A stretch of 64,000 nucleotides of DNA from Auanema rhodensis (lineage: Eukaryota; Animalia; Nematoda): contig OZ059896.1 of assembly GCA_964057225.1 (NCBI GenBank), positions 9,734,001 through 9,798,000 of the forward strand, written 5' to 3'. Positions 3,997 through 26,405 of this stretch are shown one piece after another. Position 1 is the first letter of the stretch, and each line of letters opens with the position of its first letter. The notes under the pieces were generated by a model. That model was not told the origin of the DNA. It ran no database searches and was given only the letters and a program-made list of their open reading frames with translations. The position numbers and the translations under genes were made by a program.

Positions 3997-6900
3997 CTGA
4001 ACAAAACAAATACATATGATTTATGGGTTATTTTACTATTTATATATTTTATAAACTAAAACTTTTTCTTCTCAAACTCATGTATAAATTCTAATCAGTT
4101 ATATAAGAGCTTCACAATTTACATACATTTTACAATATAGAGTTGCTAAAATTTTACTTTGAAATAAGAAAAAGTATAATATTCTTGATGAAAAAGTATA
4201 ATTTCGAATTAATTATATCAATATATTATAATCTAAACTGATTTTTCTTAATAAGAAAAAAATTATGATTAGTCTTATTAATATAATATAATATTATATT
4301 ATGCTAAAAGAAATATGAAAAATTCATCAAACTGCATCTTAAATAAAGACAATTTTCTTAAAATCACTATGTGAAGAGTCCAATTTATTCACATAGTTTA
4401 TAAGAATACATATATGAAGGTTATGAATAAAATAGGGAATATCTTGACAAACAAGAAGAGTAAGTAGAGATTAGATAAAGATTAGTCGTAATGGGAAATT
4501 AGCAAAGATGAAGCTTAAAGCCTTTTTAATAAGATAAAGGAACTGATGTTTCATATGTTATTTCATGATTTCATCCATTTATATCAATTTCATTTCATAA
4601 TCTTCGATTTCAATATGCTCCACCCTTTTAAAGACTATATTATTTGATCTAATAGCTATTTTATTAAATATATTGTATATTCAAGTATATACTTGTTAGT
4701 TTGGTTACTATTACTGCTTATTCAATTATGCTTTTTCTAATCCAAAAATATAAAGTGGAAATTTCAGCTCGGTTTTCTTCCCTCCTTATAACAATTGCAG
4801 AGAAAAAAAAAAGATTTTTTTTTGGTTAAATAAAACTTTTCTAAACCACAGGAAGTAACATGTGGACATATGGAGAGGCCAAATAAATGATGTGAAGGAT
4901 ACATACATACATATATTTTTTTTCTTTTAAAAAATTGTTGTTTGGTTGTTCAACATCTTTTAAACGTAAAATAAACAATAAATTTAAATCAAAAAAATAT
5001 TTTTAATGTATGTATAGTCTTATAAAAAAATTTTGAGAACATTTATATTTTTATAATTTAGATAGATTATGTATATCTTAAAATATTTGTTTCATAAAAC
5101 ATAAATATAACTATATATTTATATATTTTTAGGAATTCAATTAAAAGAAAATAAAGAATAAAAAAACAAAAAAATAGAAGCTTATATGATTAAGCTGTTA
5201 CAACTAATAATTTTTCTGAAGATGTCTACTAGCTTCTAGTTTTGGTTTTACCGCTATTGTTTTCTTCCCAAGGGTCTAATTTTTTCGGCCTTTCGGCTAA
5301 CTGAGAAAAAGCAGAAGAAATACTTAAAATGGTCCATATGCTAAAGTTTTAAAACAAAAAAAAAACAATTTTAGCGTTTATAGTATGGAATATCTTCATA
5401 TTTTTACTAATTTACATAAATATATATATACATATATATATATAGGTTAGTAAGGTATAAGTATTGTACTCAACTATGTTATTAAATTTTTTTAAAATAT
5501 AAAATTCAAATATTATAAAAGAAAAAGATAAAAGAAATAAAAAAATTATAATATTAAGTTGTATATACCTTTATTTAATAAAAATATGTCTTCTTTAATG
5601 ATTCTAGCAATATTTTCATGATGTATTAATGAATAAATATAAAGAATCAAGCATTTTTTTGATGAATCAACTTCAAAAATGAAATGAATATCCAATTTTT
5701 TTTCGATTCATTAGAAAAAAAAACTAAAATATAAGAAAGAGAATAAGATAGTAAGACTAATTTCAAACGTCATTCTTTCTTACATCAAAAAATAATTCGT
5801 TTTAATTTTTGAGAATAAAGGAAACGAAAAAGCTTCAATTTTTCCATTTTTTTGTATTTAAGGATTTAACAAATACCATTTTTATTCACTGCAATGAGTA
5901 TTCTTTCTGAATAGATAGGATGAAAGTAAATGATAAGCTAAAGGAATATAAAGCTTAATAAGCTAGAATTGAACCATATGCATCTGGTGAGAGGGGGGGA
6001 GGGAACTGCTAGAGGAAGGGAGAGGCAGGGTGATATAACTTGTCAATGAGACACTGAAATGGAACGAAAAAGAAAAGGATTAGTCAAAGAGTTCAGCCAG
6101 AGTAGAGGGTTAGATTGAAAAAGAGAGAGAGAGAGGGAGAGAGTGAGAGAGACAGACAGAAAGAAAGAGAGAGAGATAAAGGGATATAAACGATAAATAA
6201 AGCTGAAATCAACTAAATGGGAGGGGAAGGTAAAACAAAAAAAAAGTATTTTTCTATTTATATGTATACAAAGGTGTATATATTTACAAATAATTCATAT
6301 AACCGATTATAACATAATCTTTATAACAGATATGGCTATTATATTTCCTAAATTCTAATCTTCTATGCACTTTCTCATCCCTCTCACTGACATGATTTTT
6401 CTCTTTTTAAAATTCTTCCAGCTTTTTTATTTTTTTTCTCTATTATTGACTATTCAATCTTAGTTTTCAAGTTGCGTCTGTCCATCAATCTTACGTTTTT
6501 AATAAAAAATAACGTTTCGGCTAGGTCTATTTAGCTAAGCTTTCCACAATTTTTTATTCTGAGGATGGATGAAGACTCGAAAATTTTAAAGAGAATCAAA
6601 GAAATATCAAAGCAAAACAAAAGAGTTCGGCGCAAACACAAGGAGAAAAAAAGTATTCCAAGTGAGGAATCCGAAGTCAGACAACGGCAAAGCTACAGAT
6701 GAAAAGGAAACAAAGGCATACGTAGGCATTATTGTGGAAAAGGATGTGAATAGCCGTGAGCCAAGATATGTGTCTCTGTGTAGGAAGATGAAAAATGCCC
6801 TTAGGACATGCATAACGCTTGATAGCTCCCAGAAAGGCGGAGCTTTTATAATTTTATTTCGAATTTTCTTAATAGGAGACAAAAAGAAGATAGGTTTAAG

Positions 6901-9900
6901 TAGAAAATGCTTTTGATGAGATCTTATTCTTCGACTTTCATGTCGAATTCAGAAGCTGACACAAAAAGTTGTATGAAGAATGCTAGCTCATCAGAAAATA
7001 TATATTACTCAAACAGACTTTAATATGCTTAGCTGAGTTGAGTAAAAGTGAAACCAAGAAGAAAAGCTGGAAATATATGGTTGAACGAACATTGTAAGCA
7101 AGTGAGAATTCGCATTTTGAGGCAACTCAGAATTTTTCGGAAGTTGATTTTTAAGTTATTATGACTGTAGCAATGAAACGAAACTTAGTAGAAAAATAAG
7201 AAAATTAGTAAACCACAAGTTAAAAAATATCTATACACATATCTTTATATACACAACATATATACATATTATGTAGATGCTCTATGCCGTTCCGTTTTCT
7301 GTTGACATAGTCGGTACACTTTTTTAAATCTGACATCTGAATTCAACTGATATAAGTAGATAGAAAAGGAAGATGGTAGAAAACAAGTCAATTATATTGA
7401 CTGTGATCAAGTCATGTTATCCGTTTAGAAATTCTCTCATTTTATTCTTGTCACCAACTTCCTATTTATCTTTCCTGTTCCTCTTTCACTGCAAAGCTTT
7501 CATGCGTTGTCTCTCGGTTCTAATACTCCATATTCGTGTCTCCACTGCATCACTCTTCTCTCCATTTCACCTACTCCTTACTGATTTCCGTTTTTAGTAT
7601 GCTCACGCTTCTTTTCTTCAGAATATGATATGGTTTTGGAAGATGAACATCTGGTTGTAGCAAGCATTACAAATAACAAAACAATATTTTTTTTTGAAGT
7701 TGCATGAGATTTCGTGTTTGAAATCAATTCAAAGAATAAGTCGTCACGAATTATATTTTGTTTCTCATACTGCTTCATTGCATCTTATGTTATACGGAAA
7801 AACTAAATTCATCAAATTTAATATTTATTTTATTTAAAAATAAAATAAAATAAATATTAGTCAAACTACATATAAAGAGTAATACACATGTGCTTGTATA
7901 CATGTATATCTATGTATGTAAGTGTTTTTATTCTTCAAAATATATCTTTATGTTGATGAATCTATTACAAAACTGTCAAATGCTTAATTACATTAGATTA
8001 TTATAGATATTTTAATTAAAAATAAGAAGAAAAAGATTTATAAAAGAGAATTAAGTTTCACAATGTGTTGAACAAGGAAGAATATACCAAAAGCATTTGA
8101 GCAAAACACAAAGATAATATCCAATTTGTTTAGAAAAAAATTTTAATTGATGTAATCATCCATTTTAAGTACATTTATAATGACAATAATTAGGTGAAAA
8201 CTGTGGCAATTGGCTGATATAATTTTGGCTTTTGGCTCCAAAACGAACATAATGTCTAACGAGAGGGTAATGAAATAAGGGAAATATCCAAAACATTATT
8301 GGATACATGTCTTGAAATTCAAAATAAATATCAGAAAATAATGCACAAAAATTCCTTTATCGTGATGCTTTAATAAATTTATTAAAAATTGAAAATATTG
8401 AATTGAAGCGATGAGATAGACAAGCCAAATTTAAAAAAAGAATACTAACCAACATTCTTAAGTTTAATTCATTCTAGAAAAGAAAAACTGAAAGTTTCAA
8501 ATGTTATCTCAAAGTTTAGAGTATTTTACATAAATAACAAATAAGGATAATATCTTTACATTACTAATATATTTATAGGGAAATGAAATAATGCCATGAA
8601 AGTTATTTGAACTTCTTCATTTGATAAAAAAAAATAAATAAAAAACTGCTTAAAATGAATAAAGTAATCAATAATTCATAAAGTTTAATTGTTTTTATTT
8701 AATTTAAAATTCACATAGCCATTTTTTGAACTTATTTAATGGCAATATTATACGTTAATTATTGAATTAAAATTAGATCTTAAAAAAAACTTTCAAAAGA
8801 TGAAACTATTCTCTATGAATATATGTATTTACAGCTGTAGGATAAAGCAAGTTCAATTTTTTTATTTTAATTCTAGTTTATGTGATGAAATATTTAGCTA
8901 CAAGTATTAAAAGTTCGAAAGAATGTCTAGTATATGAAAAAAATATGGAGAGACTGAACAATTTTTCCAAAACATTTACTTGTAATTTTGAAAAAAAGTC
9001 ATATAAGCTCCTTTTCAAGACAAAACAAAGAGTTTTCTATTGTGAATGAACAGTTAGCTATCCAAAATGTTAAAAGTCTGGGTATAGTCCAGTAAAGCAA
9101 AAGACTGCCTGGCCATTTTGTTGCTGTGCTGTCCGTATCGCTCGTCAACATGTTCTCTTATAAACGGCTTCTGAATACCAAGTAGACCGTAAAACGCTTA
9201 ATATCTTCCACAATAATAAAGAAAATGGGTAAAATTGAGAGAAGAAATGTCTGTCATTTCATGGTTTTTTTTCAATTTGGTCAAAACTACATCAGCAGCT
9301 TATTTTGGTGGTAAAAGCATTTGTTCTACGAAACGTTATATTTCGGTCATTTAGTGTGAGATTCATTAAGATGAATTGGCGAACGCCATGTAAGAATATA
9401 CGAAAAAAAATCCAAATAGCTTGAAATTACTATGCTTTAATGAATTTCCTCAGAAGTAATTTTATATATCGGCTCAGTATTCTTGCAGCGGAAAAAAAAG
9501 TTTCAAGTGAAAAGAGAAAATCGAAAAGAGCAGAATAAGAAGAAAGAGCTATAAAATGATTGTGTGGATGATTTTTTAATTATAATCAATGAAAACGAAT
9601 TATTTTGGAAAAGAAAAACAAAAAAGTTATGTATGGAATATATATGAGAACAGGGTAAGCCAATGAGAACGTAAAAAATAAAAGTCCAACTATGATTGTT
9701 ATAGCGGAAAATAGCAGTAACGATTCATATTAGCAACAAGTTTTCAAAATTATAAGCTTTATGAGACTTTATGAGAGAGAGAGAGAGAGGGAAAGAAGGA
9801 AGGAATGTTGACTGACAGTAAATGTTGAATGAAATAACATTATGAAGGGCAAGGTTGAACAGAAAATGAAAGCATCGAAAGATCTGTGGAATGAGAGGGA

Positions 9901-17763: not shown

Positions 17764-20700
17764 ATGGCTGAGGAGGAAGATCCATATGCCGTGTCTTCTG
17801 ATTCCGATGATGAAGACGTTCGCAAGCCTCCTCCAAAGATTCAAATAGAAGGAAGAGAAAATACTGATCTAAATAAATTGGTTTGTAAATCTATTCATAT
17901 TATGTGCTCTTTTATTATATACGAAAAACCAATTTTATGCGTTGAAGAAGAGAGCAGTACGAAAAATTATTGTAACATTTCTTCAATCATTATTGTGGAA
18001 AGACATCTGGCATCACCAAGTCATCCATAATGATTTTAATAGATAGCCAATCAACAAACTAATTTTTATAATAATAAGTTTATATGCACATAGTCTAAAA
18101 TATCAAAAAAAAATACAACAAAATGTTCTTTATCATATACATTTGTTATATTTTAGAAAGAGGGAATATCACATGTGAGTTTGAAAATAATAATGCACCC
18201 TATTTCACATTGATTTTTCAAAATCTTTTTCTTCTTTCTACCAAAAAACACTATACTATATACTATACCAGATTATATATAACGTTTATTCAAACAATTT
18301 CTATAACAATTTCCTTTTTCCCAATGCATTACCTTTAAATATTTTAACAAAGATCATTTTAGAAGTCTGCTCTTCTAAACGACAACAAAGATATTGTGTT
18401 AGATGAAGACAGAAAAAATGAGTTAGAACAGCTAAAGCAAGCTAAAGATACTAAAAAGATGAAACAGGTAAAGAGATTTGTTTTGTATTTTATCTTATTA
18501 ACTTAAACTAAAGGATTTTGAATCTGGAGTTGTTTTAAACAAAGATGAAGAGGAGTTAGATGCCTCAAAGGCTGCTTTGGAAGAGGAACGCCAAAAACTG
18601 ACAGAAATAGGAAAGGTCAGTCATCATAATATATCTTTATCCGTCTATTTTACTAATTAATTATAACTGTTTTTAAGGTCATGATATGTTTTCTGTTCTT
18701 ATTCATTTAATATTTTTAGGAAAAGTATTCAAAATTCAAGGACAAATTTGAGAATCTTGACTCAACTCTTGGTGATAACTTGGAGGAAAAGCTAAAGAAA
18801 ATGGAACGTGATATCTCTGGATTAGGAAAAGATACTTTAGCTAGTGCTAAAGAAAAGTAAGTATTTGTTATTTTGATCAACAAAATTTTTTCTGTTTAAG
18901 ATTCGAAAAAGGAGAAGGTGATGTTAGCTATGAAAAAACTCAAGTTGATATCGAACGCAGTGCAGATCTTCAAAAAATGAAGGCTGCTTTCTCAAGGGTA
19001 AGGAAATATTTTTTTTTGTTCTTCAATTCATAGGTAAAGCATCATTATTCGGTTGAGATATTTCACATTTTTATATCAAATTTAAGAGATTAAATCGAGA
19101 GTTATATAGATTTCTTAAAGAGTTTTTTTTAAATCGAATGTTGAAGAGAAGTTTATATACTCAATGAAATATCCGGCTAGAACAGACAACCGGATTTCAG
19201 TACTCAGTACAAACAGATTCTATAATTCACGGCTTTCGACTAAGACGAATAATGACATATATATATGAAAAACGATGATGGCAAATTGAATGAAATATTT
19301 TTTTAAAATTTATATTTTCAGGATATGACAGCAGAAGAAGCTCCAAAAGATTGCGCTATCTGCAGTAAGGTTGTATATCCAGTTGAAAGAGTATTTGTTA
19401 ATAAGCAACTTTACCATGTCAACTGCTTCAAATGTAACAAATGTGCCAAGAAATTGACGTAAAGGGAATTTGATGTTAAATGTATTTAATTTAACATTTT
19501 AGACCAACAAACTACAATATGCATAAAGGAACATTATTGTGCAAGGTGCATATGCTGGAAGTTGAACATCCTGAGTTAGCTAAGACACTTGATCCAGCTA
19601 ATACGGAAGGTTTGTTTGTGTATATGATTTTAAAAAAACGAAGAAAGCGTAGTTGTGTGCGGTATATACATGTGTATAGAAAGTAACATCATACTTATGT
19701 ACATAATAATTCTTGTAATTGTTTTCTAACTGATCTTCACCGACCACTCATACAATGAAAAACAGAATTTTAACGATGTCACGTTTCGATTCAATTGTTT
19801 GAGACGATTCTAATTACCTACAACTATAGATACACTAATTAATACTATTATCAGATTATACTGATATTACATTTAATACAAGATATCCAAGTTAATATAT
19901 GTTTTTAAAGTCATTGACCATTGAGAAATATCCTATATTATTACCCAAAATCTCCCATCTGTTGTAATCGTCTGTAAATCGCTACTGACCAACAGTGGTT
20001 GGTTGTCAGTCGATTGACATCTTTGAGAGTATTAGCAAACACTATTTTCTCATCGGGACCCTATCTTTTGTGATCACAAACCATCTTGACTCTTAACAAT
20101 TATAACAAACTTTTATGTTGTTAAGCATCTATTACTCTGACTAAGTTGTCTTGTATATAAGGTTATATGAATGGAAAACTAGTAGTTGTAATGGAAAACA
20201 CAAAAAAAAAGGGAATCGTATGATGAAAAATCCTTATAGTTATAAGAATACATATATATACAAAGATAATTCAATATTATTATTAGTATTAGTTATGATA
20301 TTGTTCTAGAAGACGAACATGGTGGTGACCAGGATGATGATGATGAGGAGTTCGCCGTATCCAGCAAGCCAAAACAACTTTCTGGTGTTATCAAATGTAA
20401 GTTCAAATATCTTTCTGTTTATTAAAGAAATCGCACAACTCACAGTATTATAATACTTTCCGAGGGTCAATTATATTCAAATTGGCACTATTTATTAGAC
20501 AAAATATCTTTTCATCATGTTTTCAATAAATCTCATTTCTATCTTTCCCTTACAAAATTTTCGAAAGAATTTATGCAATCTTCTCGATATTTTCGACTGT
20601 TTATGAGTTGTCTCGGATGTCATCCATATACATCAGACGTCCTAGTCGCCATCAGGCATTTTACCCTAGCAATAGACTAGGTTACGGTGCAGCTCACACT

Positions 20701-23700
20701 ACGACACTATCATCACTCGGCGATCTACCTTTTCTTCTTCTTCTTATTCTCACAATTCTTATTGCAAATGAGGTGAAGAAAGACAGTGTTTTCATATATG
20801 CATCGTTCAGAATGTTCTATCATCATCTTCTTATTCATTTTTCTTTTCGCCATCAAACCACGACCGTTCTCGTCCCGTATATGCTCATCTTCTGTTCTCT
20901 CCTCCAATGTGTTGATGCGATTGTTTACTGGACGCACAAGACCACCAGCCGGAGGCCTACAACTCTTATCGTTCTTCTTTTCTTCTCTCTCGATTTCAGT
21001 CTTACTAGAAGACCTTCCTCCAAACTAACATTACCCTCTTGCCCTTACGCCTTATATCTCTCTCCTTCAATTCTACTCACTGTTTCATTACTTTCTCTAT
21101 CCGTTTAGACCATCACTTCTCTATCTTCATCTTCTTTCTCTCAGGCTATTCTGACTATCCTCAGTCTTATTACCAAACAGTCTCATAATCTATACGAAAT
21201 AGTCAGCCCATAGTCTTTGACGGCTCCACCTCCTCTCCCATCACAAGATAGGAAAATTGAACAAAATCGACCTGATCATCACACTACCCCCTCAAATCTA
21301 TTCTTGCTAAAACAAGGTTCCAGCCTTCCTTACAACCGATTATGGTTTCAGCTGGAGCTTCAGCAGTTCATGACGAATTGGCCCAACTGAAAAGCCTCAA
21401 AGAAAAGCGTGGCGACTTTGAATCATCTGTTAAGGAAGCTGCCAACGTTGAGAAAAAGACCAAGGTTAGTTCACTTTTCTATTATTTGGATTTAACTTTG
21501 AAATTGCAGATTGAAGAAGAAGTTTTGCAATCCGGATGGGTCAAGTCCAACAAAGAAAAGTACGTTATCATTTTTTAATTTTGTATATATATTCTATTAT
21601 TCTAGGTTTGTCTCTGGAGCCGCTTTAGAACGCGAAGAGGACGAAGATGAGATTTCTGGTGAACGTGATCCAAATATAATTCGTGAAGATAAGAAGAAAA
21701 AGCGTGAAGAATTGCACTTTGATCAAGTAAGTTTATTAACATCCAACTTTCTTTCTTTTCTTTTTGTTTTTATTTTTAACTTAAAATTATTTATTCTATT
21801 CTTATTTAATGGAACTTATTTTTTATTCTTCTAGGTTGTTGACATCAAAAATAAATGGAAATCTGGAGCTGTTGAAACAGCTGAAGATAGAACTGATAAA
21901 ACTGAACTCGAACAACTTAAGGTACAATATTTTCGAAATTTTTCTAAAATGTTTTGAGAAATCTGTATATATCTTTCGCTGAGTGAATTTTATTTTCCAG
22001 GGAACTCTATCTTCTGTAAAGGACCGCTTCCAAGAGAAAACAGATGGTGATTCAGAAGTAGTTGAGCGTCAATGGGATCGAAGTGAATTGGATACGGGTG
22101 GTAAGCTTAAACTTATAAAAATGTTTTATGTCACAGTCGTTTTGAATATGAATATTCGAGCTTTCCTTTGTTATACTGCTTCTTATTTATGTCAATACAC
22201 CGCTAGCACGCATTTCTTCAAATTCACAAGAACACTTTCACTTTTTTTTGATTTTTTGGATTAAAAAATTCAGAAGATGCTGTTCGAGCATTTTTGACAT
22301 ATTTGAGGAAGCAGTACATCAAAGAGGTTAAAGGCAAAGTTCCTCGCAAGATTGCGGTTGAAAGCTGTTAGTATATTTTGCATCGGAGTTCTGAAAACAA
22401 TTTATATGATTTTCATTATTCCTTTCACGATCGATGTATATTACCTTTTATTTTTTTTTGCAGCTGCTGCTGAAGCTAGAAAATCATTCATGGAAGGAGC
22501 TGCCTATCAATCTGGAGCTGTTGAAAAAACTGTTACTGATCTTAGCGATCTTAAATTTACTCGTAAGTTAATAATATTAGTAGTAATATGCTATATATAC
22601 AAAGCATAGCAGAATAGTTTGGATATATTTTCTTATATTATCATAAAGTGATATGTTTTGAACACTGTTATAACAGCTGTCTCAATATATTTCTCTTTTC
22701 ACGATACTTCTTCTATTGTTATAGTTGACCTCTTTAATTTTTAATTAATCATAACATCATATTACAATTCTATAATCAATACTAGATATTTTTATTTCAG
22801 AACTCAAAGGCTTTAAAGAGAAGTTTGAAAAAGGAGAAGGAGAAGTTGAAGTTCAAAAGACAGCTGTGGAAGTTGCTGAAGTTCAGCTTGGTAACATCAA
22901 GGCTGCTTTTGAAAAGGTATTGAAAAAGAAATAAGAACAATGTTTTAATTTAAAACTTAAAATTTTATAAAAATATTTCGGCTATTCAAGATGATTCATT
23001 TTCCTTTTTTTTTCTTCTTTTCCGCCCCTTCGAGTTGTTTGAAATCCACCACCCACCAACAAACAGCTGCTGTGTTTAGAGATTTAACTTAGAAGTGGAA
23101 AGCACTAACCATTACAACTCTTATTCGCCCCTCTAGAAGATGAATAGAGCACAGAAAATTTTGTTTATGATATTTATCCTATTAACTCGTTATTCTTTCA
23201 GCCGGACGAAGAAATGTCTCCAGAAGAACGTGCTGCTCAGAAGAAAAAAGAAATTGAAGCCGAGTTCCTTCGTTATAAACTTGCTCGCCGAGCTGCAGCT
23301 GAAAGAGCGAAACAACAGGTATTTTATTATTCTGAAGAACTCATATAAAAACATAGTATGTGAATAAAAGGATATGATTAAGGAGGAAGATGGAACTGCG
23401 CCTGTAGTTGAACCCGGAGAGGGTGGGGCCGATGTTGGTTCTATTAAAGATCGCTTTGATCATGGAGAGGCTTTCAAAGGCCAAGATTATGCAGGTGCTT
23501 TTTTTTGTTGTTATTAGTGCTATCAACGATAGTTCAATATGTGTTTCATATTTTTAAAACCCTTTGATAATTGTATCATACATTTTAAAACAATACAGAT
23601 AAACAACTCGACGTTGAATTTAAAATGGCTGGTAAAGCTCGTGAAAAGTTCAAGCAAATCGATGCATCTGGGGCTACTCCAGTTATGCCTAATCAGAACA

Positions 23701-25830
23701 AGAAGGTATTTGATCTTAATTCTTTATTCAAGTAGTAAAGTGTTATAAATAGGTTGAACCCAGCAAATGGGATAAGAAAGATGATAAACCAGTCGCTGAA
23801 GTCATTAACCGTAAAGAACAAACCAATGATGAGCCTTCTGACGAGGATGAAGATGCTTTCGATGTTAAGAACTTGATGAACAAATTCAAGAATATTGGTG
23901 AAAACTCGAATACCTCTTCTACTAACAAGTTTGTTTTTTATGGAAATGTTTTTTTATAATGTAATTATTTAAAGTGAGCAAAGAGCTGAGTTGTCTGCCT
24001 TGAAAACGGAGGCTAGAAACTTGAAGCAACGCTTCGAACAACGAGGTGATGATGATACTGAGCTCATAGAAGAAAAGAAGAAACAAATGCAAGAAGAATT
24101 TGAACAACTTAAAAGTGCGTTTACTTTGAATAATTTTATTTATTATTTACATCTAGGAGAAAGAGAGGAAGCCCAGAAGAGGTTAGACGAAGAAAGAGCT
24201 CAAGAAGAAATTGGTCAGGCAGAAAAGGAAGAGTTGAACATTAAGGTTGCAAATGTCACAAAAGCCTTGGTATCAATTGGTGATTATAGGCTGATCATGC
24301 ATCGAAAATGGCCGCTAAGTGGGAAAAAATTCAAGCAAAGGAAGCCAAAAAAGCCGAAAAAGGCAAAATGCCTGAAAAGAAATCAACAGCAGTAAGTTCA
24401 AACTTTTGATTTGACAGAAGTGATAGAGTGTGCGTGTGTTTCTTTATCTTTCTTTCTTTCTGCTTCTACTTCTACTATATTTAAATTTCTATTTCGCACA
24501 TTTTCTCTTTGCACTACATTTTCTTATGAACCTGCTCACCGTTAAAGCATTAACTGATCGTAATTATAGATAGTTAGTATTTTGCTTTTCTTGCAGTGCA
24601 CGACTCTTGTTATTATTTCTATAGTAATAGCTTGTATCTTCCAATACTACTGGCACAAATATGCTTTCTTTTCAACACTACTGTTAAGAAAAATTGATTC
24701 AACTGCTTGATCTTACTAATCGATTTCTTTTTTTATAAGCTTTATAGCAATAACTAACAAACCTAAATCTTCTACGATTGCTGCTTTCTGATTTTCTTTT
24801 TCTAACCGATTCCTTCTCTTTTTGCTCATTGTAAGCCATAATATAGTTCTAGGAAAGTTTTTGTTTGCAGGACCAGTGATTCTTCTATCTACACTTCCTT
24901 TTCAACCAACCAGCATTGTTCAGCACCGAATCTCTTTGAAATTTTATGTTTTATTTCATTTTTTCTGCATTTTGCATCATCACAGTCTAATTTTTTGTCT
25001 CCATGGACGATGAATTTCCAATGTCTCTGATTTGCTATACCATAATCAGCTTGTGAAAGTTCTCAGAAATTACTATATCGAAGGGGTATGCTATCGGTGA
25101 CATGGAAAACGTTTTTCTTTTCTATAAAAAATGAATCTGTATGTAATTCTGCCATGCCCTTATCATTCTTCACAACACGTCGTATTTATTGTATAAGCAC
25201 AATATAAAATTGAAAAAAAAATAAAAAGTTATATTGCTGAATTGTTTCCATGAACAAACTCGAAGTTTTTGTGAGTTGTGTGGAAATTAATCATGCTTAA
25301 CTTAGAAATGATTTTTGAATGTGAAACTTAACTACTAACTTTGTCTCATTCGTTGTCTTCTTTGTGTTTACGTTCGTTTTGTCTTTAGTAGGACAACTTC
25401 ATATCAAAGTATACAGATACAACTTTTTTAAATTTTCATGTGAAAGAGATCTAACACTGTGTGATTGAGGTGATTGCGTGTTTTTAACAAGCATGGCTTT
25501 CCTTTCAGAAATTTGTAATGAGATCCCAGCCTAAATGTGAAATTTGTGCTACCACTGTATATATGGCTGAACAATTCCAATGTTTCGGAATCTTATACCA
25601 TATCAAATGTTTCAGATGCTCATTCTGTCGACAAGCACTCAGGTAATATTCAATATAACTTTTTTTCTTTTTTAATAGTGATTTTTAGGGTTGAGAAGGT
25701 TCATAGAACATCCGAAGGTCAATTGTTCTGCCCAGTTCATTTCAAACAACTTGCCAATCCAAATGCCCAAGAACCCGAGTTGGTCAAAGAGGAAGAAAAT
25801 AATAATAATATAAAAATTGAAAATTTCTAA
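17764..25830 (+). CDS. tag-273: Multi-exon LIM-domain protein with acidic, repeat-rich middle (tag-273/EPLIN-LIMD2-like), multiple isoforms
   Basis: MAEEEDPYAVSSDSDDED...; LIM1 CAICSKVVYPVERVFVNKQLYHVNCFKCNKCAKKLT/PTNYNMHKGTLLCKVH (19322-19560); LIM2 CEICATTVYMAEQFQCFGILYHIKCFRCSFCRQALR/VEKVHRTSEGQLFCPVH (25509-25830); more than 20 in-frame GT-AG exons between. The symbol comes from recalled architecture, not a search. Confidence 0.8.
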
Positions 25831-26405
25831 TTATTGTATGCATATTTATTAAGAATAAATGAATATTAATCATATGATGTGCAGAAGCTCAGCTTACCGT
25901 ATATGCCAAAGAATTCTCAACAGTGATTTACAAACAAAACATTACATTATCTTCATTAAATACAATACAGTGTACATATTTTTCACATATTTTATATTAT
26001 TGTGTCTGATAATTGACAGTGCTTACACTCTAAAAAATCTGTTAAAGCGAGATAGGATAAAACGGTTTAATGAGAGATATTTAAAGATTTTCACTTATTA
26101 TAATCTATTCTGATGAAAAATTGAATTTAACAATATTTTCGGTACGTTTTTACTTTCTCTCAGAACTATTAACTGATTTCTAACGGTACTCGCTTCCATG
26201 TTTTTCATAAATATACGGTAACCAAGCATACGTAGTGCAACAGGCGCGAAAGTATAACTATTTTCAACTTATTTACAAGGTTAAGCTTAAAAGTATTTCT
26301 TAAAGTATTTTAATTTAATTGTATCTTTATATTTCAGTATTTTAAAATTATATATATATATATGGATGGATAGATATGTATATGTGAAGTGAAATAAATT
26401 TAAGC

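What the first reader, a model, noticed from the sequence alone, without database searches (positions are those of the whole stretch)
24290..25830. LIM gene has three phase-0 alternative last exons: membrane tail anchor, two-residue stop, or second LIM domain
Seen: the common exon ends ...PEKKSTA|gtaagt (24391, phase 0). Three strong acceptors follow, each in frame: ttgcag|CTTLVIISIVIACIFQYYWHKYAFFSTLLLRKIDSTA* (24597-24710, hydrophobic segment followed by aromatic/basic residues); ttgcag|DQ* (24871-24879); and tttcag|KFVMRSQPKCEIC... LIM2 (25509-25830). Inference: 3'-end choice switches a putative actin-binding scaffold between tail-anchored, soluble and two-LIM forms. A membrane-anchored EPLIN/Xin-like isoform would be unusual.
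Basis: partly seen in the sequence, partly recalled or inferred. Interest (0 to 1): 0.7.

Follow-up and report, generated by a model that had tools for sequence, protein, structure and literature searches.

The report
Membrane-anchor tail option of worm LIM gene
This roundworm's copy of the little-studied LIM-domain gene tag-273 can end in three ways (a short hydrophobic membrane-anchor tail, a two-residue stub, or a second LIM domain), and the same three endings sit in the same order in distant worm relatives, so the anchor tail is a real, conserved and so far undescribed isoform rather than a chance reading frame.

Summary
The gene (17764-25830, + strand) is the orthologue of C. elegans tag-273/Y57G11A.1.

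By itself the 37-codon hydrophobic frame is unremarkable: about 20% of shuffled copies of this T-rich intron give one. Comparison settles it.
- The same layout (phase-0 donor, hydrophobic exon, DQ-stop exon, LIM2) occurs in Auanema sp. JU1783, Ancylostoma ceylanicum and Angiostrongylus cantonensis. Diploscapter pachys has the hydrophobic exon.
- Hydrophobic-tail proteins are annotated in Ancylostoma, Nippostrongylus and Teladorsagia and share a C-x-x-Q-x-Y-W-H motif with the window.
- The short ending is annotated from Ascaris to C. elegans, where a polyadenylated RNA contig carries it.
- Two Pristionchus species lack the separate exon. Reading through the donor there gives a conserved hydrophobic tail.
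- No such tail was seen in Caenorhabditis, which may explain why it is unknown.

The tail and DQ forms probably use two acceptors of one terminal exon with a shared AATAAA (25220). Conserved CUAAC, GCAUG and GU-rich motifs flank the acceptors.

Verdict: a new variant of a known kind, of moderate interest. The scan has not reported this locus before.

The parts
17764..25830 (+). tag-273 (Y57G11A.1) orthologue, about 21 exons, from the ATG to the stop of the LIM2 form
   Evidence: tblastn of Auanema sp. JU1783 protein P0154 (894 aa) is collinear over the whole length. The family was named from the hits.
19313..19608 (+). LIM1, in two exons (19313-19459 and 19504-19608)
   Evidence: Pfam LIM, E 1.9e-7. 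The best single-LIM match among solved structures for the orthologous segment is EPLIN 2d8y, E 5e-13.
21342..21344 (+). Internal ATG (MVSAGASAVHDELAQ...), the likely start of a LIM1-less isoform from an internal promoter
   Evidence: C. elegans isoform a (P0222), H. bacteriophora P0035 and A. duodenale P0158 start at the homologous MV.AG.
24290..24391 (+). Last common exon (ADHASKMAAKWEKIQAKEAKKAEKGKMPEKKSTA), ending in phase 0
   Evidence: It is 33/33 identical to JU1783 over the aligned residues. The motif is conserved across nematodes.
24392..24397 (+). Shared 5' splice site GTAAGT
   Evidence: The position is the same in all orthologous loci.
24428..24439 (+). Conserved intronic GU-rich element GTGTGCGTGTGT, 36 nt after the donor
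   Evidence: It is an island of identity with JU1783 in otherwise diverged intron. It resembles the UGUGUG SUP-12 site described in PMC3469465 (inference).
24597..24710 (+). Hydrophobic (tail-anchor) coding segment of 37 codons plus TGA, entered through acceptor cttgcag|24597
   Evidence: Homologous exons and tails were found in eight sequences from six genera (alignment A4). Pair scores exceed those of 264 hydrophobic decoy ORFs.
24754..24806 (+). Two CTAAC motifs (24754, 24802) between the tail stop and the DQ acceptor
   Evidence: Across the equivalent segment of five species CTAAC occurs 11 times against 0.9 expected. CUAAC repeats are the ASD-2 site in unc-60 (PMC3469465).
24871..24879 (+). 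Two-residue ending GAC CAG TGA (DQ*), entered through acceptor tttgcag|24871
   Evidence: A 26-nt block around it is identical in JU1783. DQ* is annotated in Haemonchus, Necator, Cyathostominae, Cylicocyclus and Parelaphostrongylus and is present in the A. ceylanicum and Angiostrongylus loci.
24880..25240 (+). 3' UTR of the proximal terminal exon, with conserved TATTTATTGTA (25183-25193) and AATAAA (25220-25225). The end coordinate is approximate.
   Evidence: The same motif and AATAAA occur in JU1783. TATTTATTATTGTA occurs in two Pristionchus species.
25451..25495 (+). CTAAC followed by TGTGTG (25451-25463), and TTAACAAGCATG (25484-25495), just upstream of the LIM2 acceptor
   Evidence: YTAACA[AT]GCATG lies within 45 nt of the LIM2 acceptor in 4 of 8 species (binomial P about 7e-6). 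The other four have YTAAC, three of them followed within about 2 nt by GTGTG.
25509..25642 (+). LIM2 exon 1
   Evidence: Pfam LIM, E 1.3e-5. It is about 90% identical to JU1783. In orthologues it is joined directly to ...PEKK...
25689..25830 (+). LIM2 exon 2, with stop TAA at 25828-25830. AATAAA follows at 25854.

Best explanation
The window carries the orthologue of C. elegans tag-273, a long, highly charged LIM-domain protein. Its LIM domains are of the EPLIN/MICAL/CRP type. After the last common exon (ending at 24391, phase 0) the transcript is finished in one of three ways.

1. Splicing to 24597 adds a 37-residue tail. Its roughly 15-residue hydrophobic core is preceded by a lysine-rich stretch and followed by a conserved Q-x-Y-W-H juxtamembrane motif and basic residues. 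This is the layout of a tail-anchored membrane protein with a cytosolic N-terminus.
2. Splicing to 24871 adds only Asp-Gln and a stop, giving a soluble form without LIM2.
3. Skipping this region and splicing to 25509 adds the second LIM domain.

Endings 1 and 2 are most likely two alternative 3' splice sites of a single proximal terminal exon that ends at the conserved AATAAA at 25220. Ending 3 uses the distal poly(A) signal at 25854.

The choice is probably set by tissue-specific RNA-binding proteins: STAR/ASD-2-type at CUAAC, RBFOX at GCAUG, and SUP-12-type at GU-rich runs. Their motifs are conserved next to the competing acceptors, much as in C. elegans unc-60.

What is shown: the sequence features, their conservation, and the existence of all three endings in public gene models of other species. 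RNA evidence in other species exists for the short and LIM2 endings only.

What is inferred: use of the junctions in this species, the shared poly(A) site, membrane insertion, and the identity of the regulators.
For: **Layout**
- The features are in the window as described.
- The same order of phase-0 donor, hydrophobic exon, DQ* and LIM2 is found in Auanema JU1783 (L005), A. ceylanicum (L002) and Angiostrongylus cantonensis (L010). Diploscapter (L008) has the hydrophobic exon.

**Hydrophobic tails in public gene models**
- A. ceylanicum P0211 and P0214, from two assemblies, and A. duodenale P0158.
- N. brasiliensis P0255.
- T. circumcincta P0282.

**Homology of the tails**
- Pair scores are window-JU1783 64, JU1783-Nippostrongylus 52 and Nippostrongylus-Ancylostoma 61. 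Each exceeds all 264 hydrophobic decoy ORF tails (alignment A4).
- The per-intron chance of such an ORF is 0.06-0.20, yet one is present in five independent loci.

**Constraint between the window and JU1783**
- Synonymous sites of the flanking exons are saturated (pS 0.83-0.88).
- The tail exon with its acceptor, and the DQ block, are islands of identity within the intron.

**Tail-anchor features**
- The Kyte-Doolittle 19-residue mean is 1.85-2.4 in the tails.
- In A. ceylanicum P0211 no window outside the last 60 residues exceeds 0.77, and the LIM2-form orthologues never exceed 0.9.
- The N-terminus is acidic and is not a signal peptide.

**Short ending**
- C. elegans isoforms b and c end in the stub, and RNA contig L003 carries it with a poly(A) tail.
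- Ascaris, Haemonchus and Necator isoforms also have it.

**Shared terminal exon**
- JU1783 has no poly(A)-like hexamer and no donor between the tail stop and the DQ acceptor.

**Regulatory motifs**
- Enrichment and conservation.
- Precedents: PMC3469465 and PMC3585155.
Against: - Use of 24597 and 24871 here is therefore inferred.
- Public hydrophobic-tail models could be choices of ab initio gene predictors. The A. ceylanicum paper says only that AUGUSTUS was run with cDNA hints.
- Between the window and JU1783 the tail exon has pN about equal to pS (0.26 against 0.29). That pair on its own shows nucleotide-level constraint rather than protein-level constraint.
- The hydrophobic core is short, at 15-16 residues.
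- No such exon was seen in Caenorhabditis sp. 36 or Mesorhabditis, and none is annotated in the curated isoform sets of C. elegans, C. briggsae or Haemonchus.
Confidence: 0.72

Rival explanations
1. The hydrophobic frame is a chance ORF in T-rich intron sequence. Only the DQ* and LIM2 endings are real.
For: - 19.5% of shuffles of the window segment give a comparable ORF.
- Other acceptor-plus-ORF combinations exist in the same intron.
Against: - The ORF sits at the same place and in the same phase in loci or models of six further genera, including genomes where this segment is up to 43% G+C.
- It shares a C..Q.YW motif and beats 264 hydrophobic decoys.
- Its acceptor and first 60 nt are conserved with JU1783, although synonymous sites are otherwise saturated.
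Confidence: 0.05
2. The exon is real and conserved, but its product is not a membrane anchor. There are two versions of this idea. In one, the conserved segment acts at the RNA level, as a decoy acceptor or regulatory element that tunes how much DQ or LIM2 message is made. In the other, the hydrophobic C-terminus serves as a degradation or aggregation signal, or as an amphipathic or hairpin lipid-droplet signal, rather than a bilayer-spanning anchor.
For: - pN is about equal to pS between the window and JU1783, with unusually low pS. This is typical of splicing-regulatory constraint.
- The hydrophobic core is short.
- CUAAC repeats and GU-rich elements are dense around the exon.
- The sequence after the Q.YW motif diverges freely.
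Against: - Hydrophobicity, phase and an in-frame stop are kept in lineages whose nucleotide sequences are no longer alignable, and indels are in frame.
- Pristionchus keeps a hydrophobic tail through a different gene structure.
- The lysine-rich flank before the core and the basic residues after it fit a membrane anchor.
Confidence: 0.18
3. The hydrophobic exon is an internal cassette exon, spliced onward from the GTAAGC at 24831 to the LIM2 exon. Its stop codon would then make an unproductive, decay-prone message.
For: A donor-like GTAAGC lies at 24831, after the tail stop.
Against: - That donor is absent from JU1783, A. ceylanicum and Angiostrongylus.
- It lies only 39 nt before the DQ acceptor.
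- Coding conservation of the tail would be unnecessary for a poison exon.
Confidence: 0.05

Closest known systems
C. elegans tag-273 / Y57G11A.1 (isoforms a-d)
   Same: It is the orthologous gene. Shared features are LIM1, charged repeats, the KMAAKWEKIQ.KEAKKAEK motif, a phase-0 branch point, a two-residue alternative ending (GNG|AQ*) and a LIM2 ending. The internal MV.AG start is also shared.
   Different: No hydrophobic ending is annotated in C. elegans, C. briggsae, C. remanei or C. nigoni, and none was found in the Caenorhabditis sp. 36 locus. The gene is functionally uncharacterised: only five papers in the library mention it, all in passing.
SLMAP (sarcolemmal membrane-associated protein) alternative tail anchors
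   Same: It is a long coiled-coil cytoskeleton-associated protein whose C-terminal tail anchor is selected by alternative splicing. The hydrophobic profile of the anchor decides the target membrane (PMC2712456).
   Different: - It is an unrelated protein family.
- SLMAP switches between two anchors. Here the choice is anchor, no anchor or a LIM domain.
- SLMAP targeting is experimentally shown, whereas here it is predicted.
C. elegans unc-60 (ADF/cofilin) alternative pre-mRNA processing by ASD-2 and SUP-12
   Same: One upstream exon is joined either to a proximal set ending at its own poly(A) site or to a distal set. CUAAC repeats and a UGUGUG stretch next to the proximal 3' splice site mediate the switch (PMC3469465). 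Comparable CUAAC and GU-rich motifs are conserved here.
   Different: Binding of these factors here is untested. Half of the species have GCAUG (an RBFOX-type site) instead of GU repeats upstream of LIM2.
EPLIN / LIMA1 (and the MICAL and LIMD2 LIM domains)
   Same: Among solved single-LIM proteins the LIM1 segment matches EPLIN best (2d8y, E 5e-13), followed by MICAL1 and LIMD2. Some databases name the Ascaris and Aphelenchoides orthologues 'LIM domain and actin-binding protein 1'.
   Different: - CRP1 scores as high.
- No similarity outside the LIM domain was tested.
- EPLIN has one central LIM domain and no known membrane-anchored isoform (own knowledge; nothing was found).

Membership tests
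Tail-anchored membrane proteins | A single hydrophobic segment within about 40 residues of the C-terminus | tested here: met
   The hydrophobic core is residues 1-15 of the 37-residue tail, with 22 residues after it. The Kyte-Doolittle mean is 2.81 over 15 residues and 1.85 over 19. The homologous tails behave the same way.
Tail-anchored membrane proteins | No N-terminal signal peptide and no other membrane segment | tested here: met
   The N-terminus MAEEEDPYAVSSDSDDED is acidic. In the orthologues the highest 19-residue hydropathy outside the tail is 0.9 or less.
Tail-anchored membrane proteins | A segment long and hydrophobic enough to span a bilayer | tested here: inconclusive
   The uninterrupted core is only 15-16 residues. 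No dedicated predictor was available.
Tail-anchored membrane proteins | Post-translational insertion and membrane localisation | not testable with these tools
   This needs a reporter fusion or fractionation.
TAG-273 (Y57G11A.1) family of nematode LIM proteins | Collinear similarity over the full length, with LIM domains at both conserved positions | tested here: met
   tblastn of P0154 covers residues 1-893 in order. Pfam LIM is found at both places. Sixty orthologue clusters were found.
TAG-273 (Y57G11A.1) family of nematode LIM proteins | The KMAAKWEKIQAKEAKKAEK..MP.KK motif immediately before the alternative endings | tested here: met
Alternative terminal exon / alternative 3' splice-site event | Competing acceptors in a compatible phase after one donor, with a separate poly(A) signal for the proximal end | tested here: met
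   The AATAAA at 25220 and the surrounding blocks are conserved in JU1783.
Alternative terminal exon / alternative 3' splice-site event | Spliced RNA showing each junction in this species | not testable with these tools
Alternative terminal exon / alternative 3' splice-site event | Each junction documented in orthologues | tested here: met
   - Short ending: C. elegans RNA contig L003 with a poly(A) tail.
- LIM2 ending: many models.
- Hydrophobic ending: gene models only, in Ancylostoma, Nippostrongylus and Teladorsagia.
EPLIN / LIMA1 family | Homology beyond the LIM domain (flanking actin-binding regions) | not tested
   No referenced LIMA1 full-length sequence was on hand. Only the LIM domain was compared.

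The most novel reading that the evidence does not exclude
A membrane-tethered isoform of the TAG-273 LIM scaffold is an ancient feature of rhabditid and strongylid nematodes, present in Auanema, Diploscapter and four strongylid genera. It would link the actin cytoskeleton or contractile apparatus to an organelle or sarcoplasmic membrane. It would be under a conserved tissue-specific splicing code (CUAAC, GCAUG, GU-rich). Pristionchus would have rebuilt it by donor read-through, and Caenorhabditis would have lost it, which is why it has escaped study.
Probability: 0.45. Interest if true: 0.65.

Novelty: new variant of a known kind. Interest (0 to 1): 0.55.

Why it matters
tag-273 is a conserved but unstudied nematode gene, and its parasite orthologues already appear in sequence databases as 'LIM domain protein variant'. 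A conserved switch between a membrane-anchored form, a stub and a two-LIM form suggests the protein works at a membrane-cytoskeleton interface in some tissues. It also offers a compact locus of about 1.1 kb for studying how 3' splice-site choice and intronic polyadenylation are coordinated. The case shows that an isoform absent from C. elegans can be ancestral and widespread in its relatives. It also shows that a hydrophobic 'chance-looking' frame in AT-rich intron can be judged by comparative data alone.

Tried and rejected
**Reads.** No place was reported as human-like.

**Joined model.** I never searched a joined spliced model. Exons were searched singly by reference, and public orthologue proteins stood in for the full length.

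**Searches that added little.**
- Pfam on the hydrophobic exon gave only sub-threshold noise.
- The intron has no second copy in the genome, so it is not a repeat.
- The representative search with LIM2 exon 1 was dominated by multi-LIM proteins. Only a handful of its hits were orthologues.
- A short-fragment search for junction-spanning RNA-derived peptides returned mostly genomic read-through ORFs.

**Loci that could not be fetched.**
- C. elegans P0165, A. ceylanicum P0211 and Haemonchus P0164 are not on record as the longest products.
- The C. elegans and Haemonchus genomic introns were therefore not examined.

**Ideas weighed and rejected.**
- Direct window-versus-Ancylostoma tail similarity is weak. 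Between 5 and 25 of 264 decoys score as high, so homology rests on the intermediates.
- dN/dS between the window and JU1783 does not show protein-level selection.
- I considered a KASH-like tail, but there is no PPPX-type ending.
- I considered a cassette (poison) exon, but the donor at 24831 is not conserved.
Full report
**What is there.**

- The exon 24290-24391 (ADHASKMAAKWEKIQAKEAKKAEKGKMPEKKSTA) ends in phase 0 before GTAAGT.
- An acceptor at 24597 opens a 37-codon hydrophobic frame with its stop at 24708-24710.
- An acceptor at 24871 opens GAC CAG TGA.
- An acceptor at 25509 opens a LIM domain (Pfam LIM). It continues after a 46-nt intron (25643-25688) to the stop at 25828-25830.
- AATAAA hexamers lie at 25220 and 25854.

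The genome is a 181-Mb nematode assembly. Earlier notes of the scan call it Auanema-like. My own comparison agrees: the closest protein is from Auanema sp. JU1783. However, synonymous sites between the two are saturated (pS 0.83-0.88), so it is a different species.

**The gene.**

tblastn of the JU1783 protein P0154 (894 aa) lays out about 21 short exons from the ATG at 17764 to 25830. The family is C. elegans Y57G11A.1 / tag-273.
- It has an acidic N-terminus.
- LIM1 lies at 19313-19608. Its orthologous segment matches the EPLIN, MICAL and LIMD2 LIM domains and CRP.
- A long charged region follows, with repeated K-[DE]-[KR]-F motifs and coiled-coil-like stretches.
- The invariant KMAAKWEKIQAKEAKKAEK motif comes next, and then the alternative endings.

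tag-273 is essentially unstudied. Five papers in the library mention it, none as their subject.

**Is the hydrophobic frame more than chance?**

Within the window alone it is not.
- The 1117-nt intron is 41% T.
- It holds other acceptor-like sites followed by 29- and 46-codon frames.
- 19.5% of dinucleotide shuffles of 24392-24879 produce an acceptor followed by a hydrophobic ORF of 20 or more codons.
- A note on this same genome (s1-393716) describes a similar proposal in smg-6 that turned out to be a chance ORF.

I therefore looked for independent evidence.

**Comparative evidence.**

A search with the conserved region of the Pristionchus orthologue returned 60 orthologue clusters. I sorted them by what follows ...MP.KK.. 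and found three recurring endings.

(a) LIM2 occurs in almost all lineages.

(b) A stub of one to three residues is widespread.
- DQ* occurs in Haemonchus, Necator, Cyathostominae, Cylicocyclus and Parelaphostrongylus.
- DHQ* occurs in Nippostrongylus, AQ*/AP* in Caenorhabditis, E* in Pristionchus and DK* in Ascaris and Parascaris.

(c) A hydrophobic tail occurs in several strongylids.
- A. ceylanicum (P0211 and P0214, two assemblies): LAATVCFGLVAICLALQYGHQLVVLLRR.
- A. duodenale (P0158).
- N. brasiliensis (P0255): LISAAVCLTLALFCVAQQYWPQLIRLINR.
- T. circumcincta (P0282): LAATVLCFALVVFCVAQQYWHQLLATTYH.

A. ceylanicum carries forms (a) and (c), plus a donor read-through form, as isoforms of one gene. 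Its DQ* exon is present in the genomic locus but is not among the models I read.

**Genomic loci**.

The order of phase-0 donor, hydrophobic exon, DQ* exon and LIM2 is identical in three further loci. Coordinates are the first base of each exon.

| Locus | Species | Tail exon | DQ* exon | LIM2 |
|---|---|---|---|---|
| window | this species | 24597 | 24871 | 25509 |
| L005 | Auanema JU1783 | 7612 | 7815 | 8348 |
| L002 | A. ceylanicum | 44253 | 44585 | 46166 |
| L010 | Angiostrongylus cantonensis | 40938 | 41378 | 42242 |

- The JU1783 tail reads CMAVILLSILLACFCQHYWPHAFLTLSAPKTK.
- The Angiostrongylus tail reads PSITLGIGLIMLYVAIQYHLYHL and is not annotated.
- Diploscapter pachys (L008) has LLPAVVIVGLATVCIVASFIRD at 6855.
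- In each of these loci exactly one such candidate exists. The per-locus chance is 0.06-0.09 in the four other loci.

**Homology of the tails.**

Tail similarity was judged against 264 hydrophobic ORF tails harvested from the same loci.
- Window-JU1783 scores 64, JU1783-Nippostrongylus 52 and Nippostrongylus-Ancylostoma 61. Each beats every decoy.
- Ancylostoma-Angiostrongylus and Ancylostoma-Diploscapter are matched by at most one decoy.
- The direct window-Ancylostoma score is not significant, so homology is by transitivity.
- The shared signature is a small residue, four hydrophobic residues, Cys, then x(1-3)-Q-[QYH]-Y-[WG]-[HP]-[QKH] (alignment A4).

**Pristionchus and the lineages without a tail.**
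- Pristionchus pacificus and P. fissidentatus lack a separate exon.
- Running through the donor there gives VSRMIIGIMIIAIMIIPFLIPLRPSSTIQ* and VSLMGIMMILAIIPLLIPFLISLLSPSTLH*.
- These two tails differ by in-frame indels and mostly conservative changes (pN 0.21, pS 0.42).
- This suggests that the same kind of product is made there through a different gene structure.
- No candidate was seen in Caenorhabditis sp. 36 or Mesorhabditis spiculigera.

**Conservation pattern in the intron** (window against JU1783).

Against a diverged background, the islands of identity are:
- GTGTGCGTGTG, 36 nt after the donor.
- The tail acceptor plus the first roughly 60 nt of the tail.
- A perfect 26-nt block across the DQ acceptor, codons and stop.
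- Blocks in the following 350 nt, including TATTTATTGTA and AATAAA.
- A GU-rich block just beyond the AATAAA.
- TTAACAAGCATG, 14-25 nt before the LIM2 acceptor.

In the tail exon pS is 0.29 and pN is 0.26. This pair therefore shows strong nucleotide-level constraint, as is common for regulated alternative exons. It does not by itself show protein-level selection. The protein-level argument comes from the distant lineages.

**How the ends are probably made.**
- JU1783 has neither a poly(A)-like hexamer nor a donor between the tail stop and the DQ acceptor. The window has only weak variants there.
- The tail and DQ forms are therefore best read as two 3' splice sites of one proximal terminal exon that ends after AATAAA 25220. 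The LIM2 form skips that exon and ends after AATAAA 25854.
- The short form is a genuine polyadenylated mRNA in C. elegans (contig L003).
- CTAAC occurs 11 times, against 0.9 expected, between the tail stop and the short-exon acceptor in five species.
- YTAACA[AT]GCATG lies within 45 nt of the LIM2 acceptor in four of eight species (P about 7e-6). The other four have YTAAC, three of them followed within about 2 nt by GTGTG.
- In C. elegans unc-60, CUAAC repeats (ASD-2) and UGUGUG (SUP-12) beside a proximal 3' splice site switch processing to the distal exon set (PMC3469465).
- An upstream UGCAUG bound by ASD-1/FOX-1 represses the downstream exon of egl-15 (PMC3585155).
- By analogy the three-way choice here is likely tissue-specific. 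This is inference.

**Is it a tail anchor?**
- The tail has a 15-16-residue hydrophobic core. The Kyte-Doolittle mean is 2.8 over 15 residues and 1.85 over 19.
- The core is 22 residues from the C-terminus. It is preceded by KEAKKAEKGKMPEKK and followed by H, K, R and K.
- The rest of the protein has no hydrophobic segment and no signal peptide.
- That meets the sequence criteria for a tail-anchored protein. The short core leaves both the spanning ability and the target membrane open.

**Rivals.**
- Chance ORF: now unlikely, about 5%.
- A real exon with a non-anchor role, such as an RNA-level regulator or a degron or hairpin: about 18%.
- A cassette or poison exon using GTAAGC at 24831: about 5%, because that donor is not conserved.

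**Limits.**
- I searched no joined spliced model. Exons were searched by reference, and public orthologue proteins served for full-length comparisons.
- The hydrophobic-tail gene models in other species may owe something to ab initio prediction. The A. ceylanicum paper states only that AUGUSTUS was run with cDNA hints.

**Verdict.**

The short and LIM2 forms are already annotated in C. elegans. The anchored form exists only as unnamed models in a few parasite annotations and is undescribed. It is best classed as a new variant of a known kind, namely a splice-selected tail anchor as in SLMAP (PMC2712456). Interest is moderate.

Noticed in passing
window 21342-21470 (ORF 21342-21578): An internal ATG opens MVSAGASAVHDELAQLKSLKEKRGDFESS... 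after a roughly 900-nt intron. C. elegans isoform a (598 aa), H. bacteriophora P0035 and A. duodenale P0158 start at the homologous MV.AG. A LIM1-less isoform from an internal promoter is therefore probably conserved, which would give at least 2 x 3 protein forms.
   Followed up: partly
L006:7794-7883 and L011 (about 7972-8064): In Pristionchus pacificus and P. fissidentatus, reading through the shared donor gives conserved hydrophobic tails of 29-30 residues (GIM.I.AI.IP.LIP). They differ by in-frame indels. This may be a different way of making the anchored form.
   Followed up: partly
window 25183-25193; L005:8094; L006:8289; L011:8498: An AU-rich element TATTTATT(ATT)GTA is conserved in the short-form 3' UTR in the window, JU1783 and two Pristionchus species. 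It lies about 30 nt before the poly(A) signal in the window, JU1783 and P. pacificus; no AATAAA follows it in P. fissidentatus. It may be a stability or translation control site.
   Followed up: no
window 18720-24110 (coding exons): The protein carries about eight copies of a short K-[DE]-[KR]-F-[EQ]-x-G-type motif (FKDKFENL, AKEKFEKGEGD, VKDRFQEK, FKEKFEKGEGE, IKDRFDHGEAF, AREKFKQI, MNKFKNIGE, LKQRFEQRGD). The function is unknown and no Pfam family covers them.
   Followed up: no
window 24290-24391 and 25509-25643 against L005: Synonymous sites between this genome and Auanema sp. JU1783 are saturated (pS 0.83-0.88), while the proteins are about 85-100% identical. The window's species is a relative of JU1783 and not the same species.
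   Followed up: yes
P0105 (1254 aa): One distant orthologue model fuses the LIM2 exon to a multi-pass membrane protein downstream. It looks like a gene-merging artefact and not a membrane isoform.
   Followed up: no
window 24392-24406: Reading through the donor gives VSSNF*. A. ceylanicum has an annotated read-through isoform (P0219, ...TAAVSLP). The 'VS' simply reflects the GT.AGT donor, so this fourth ending has no conserved peptide.
   Followed up: partly
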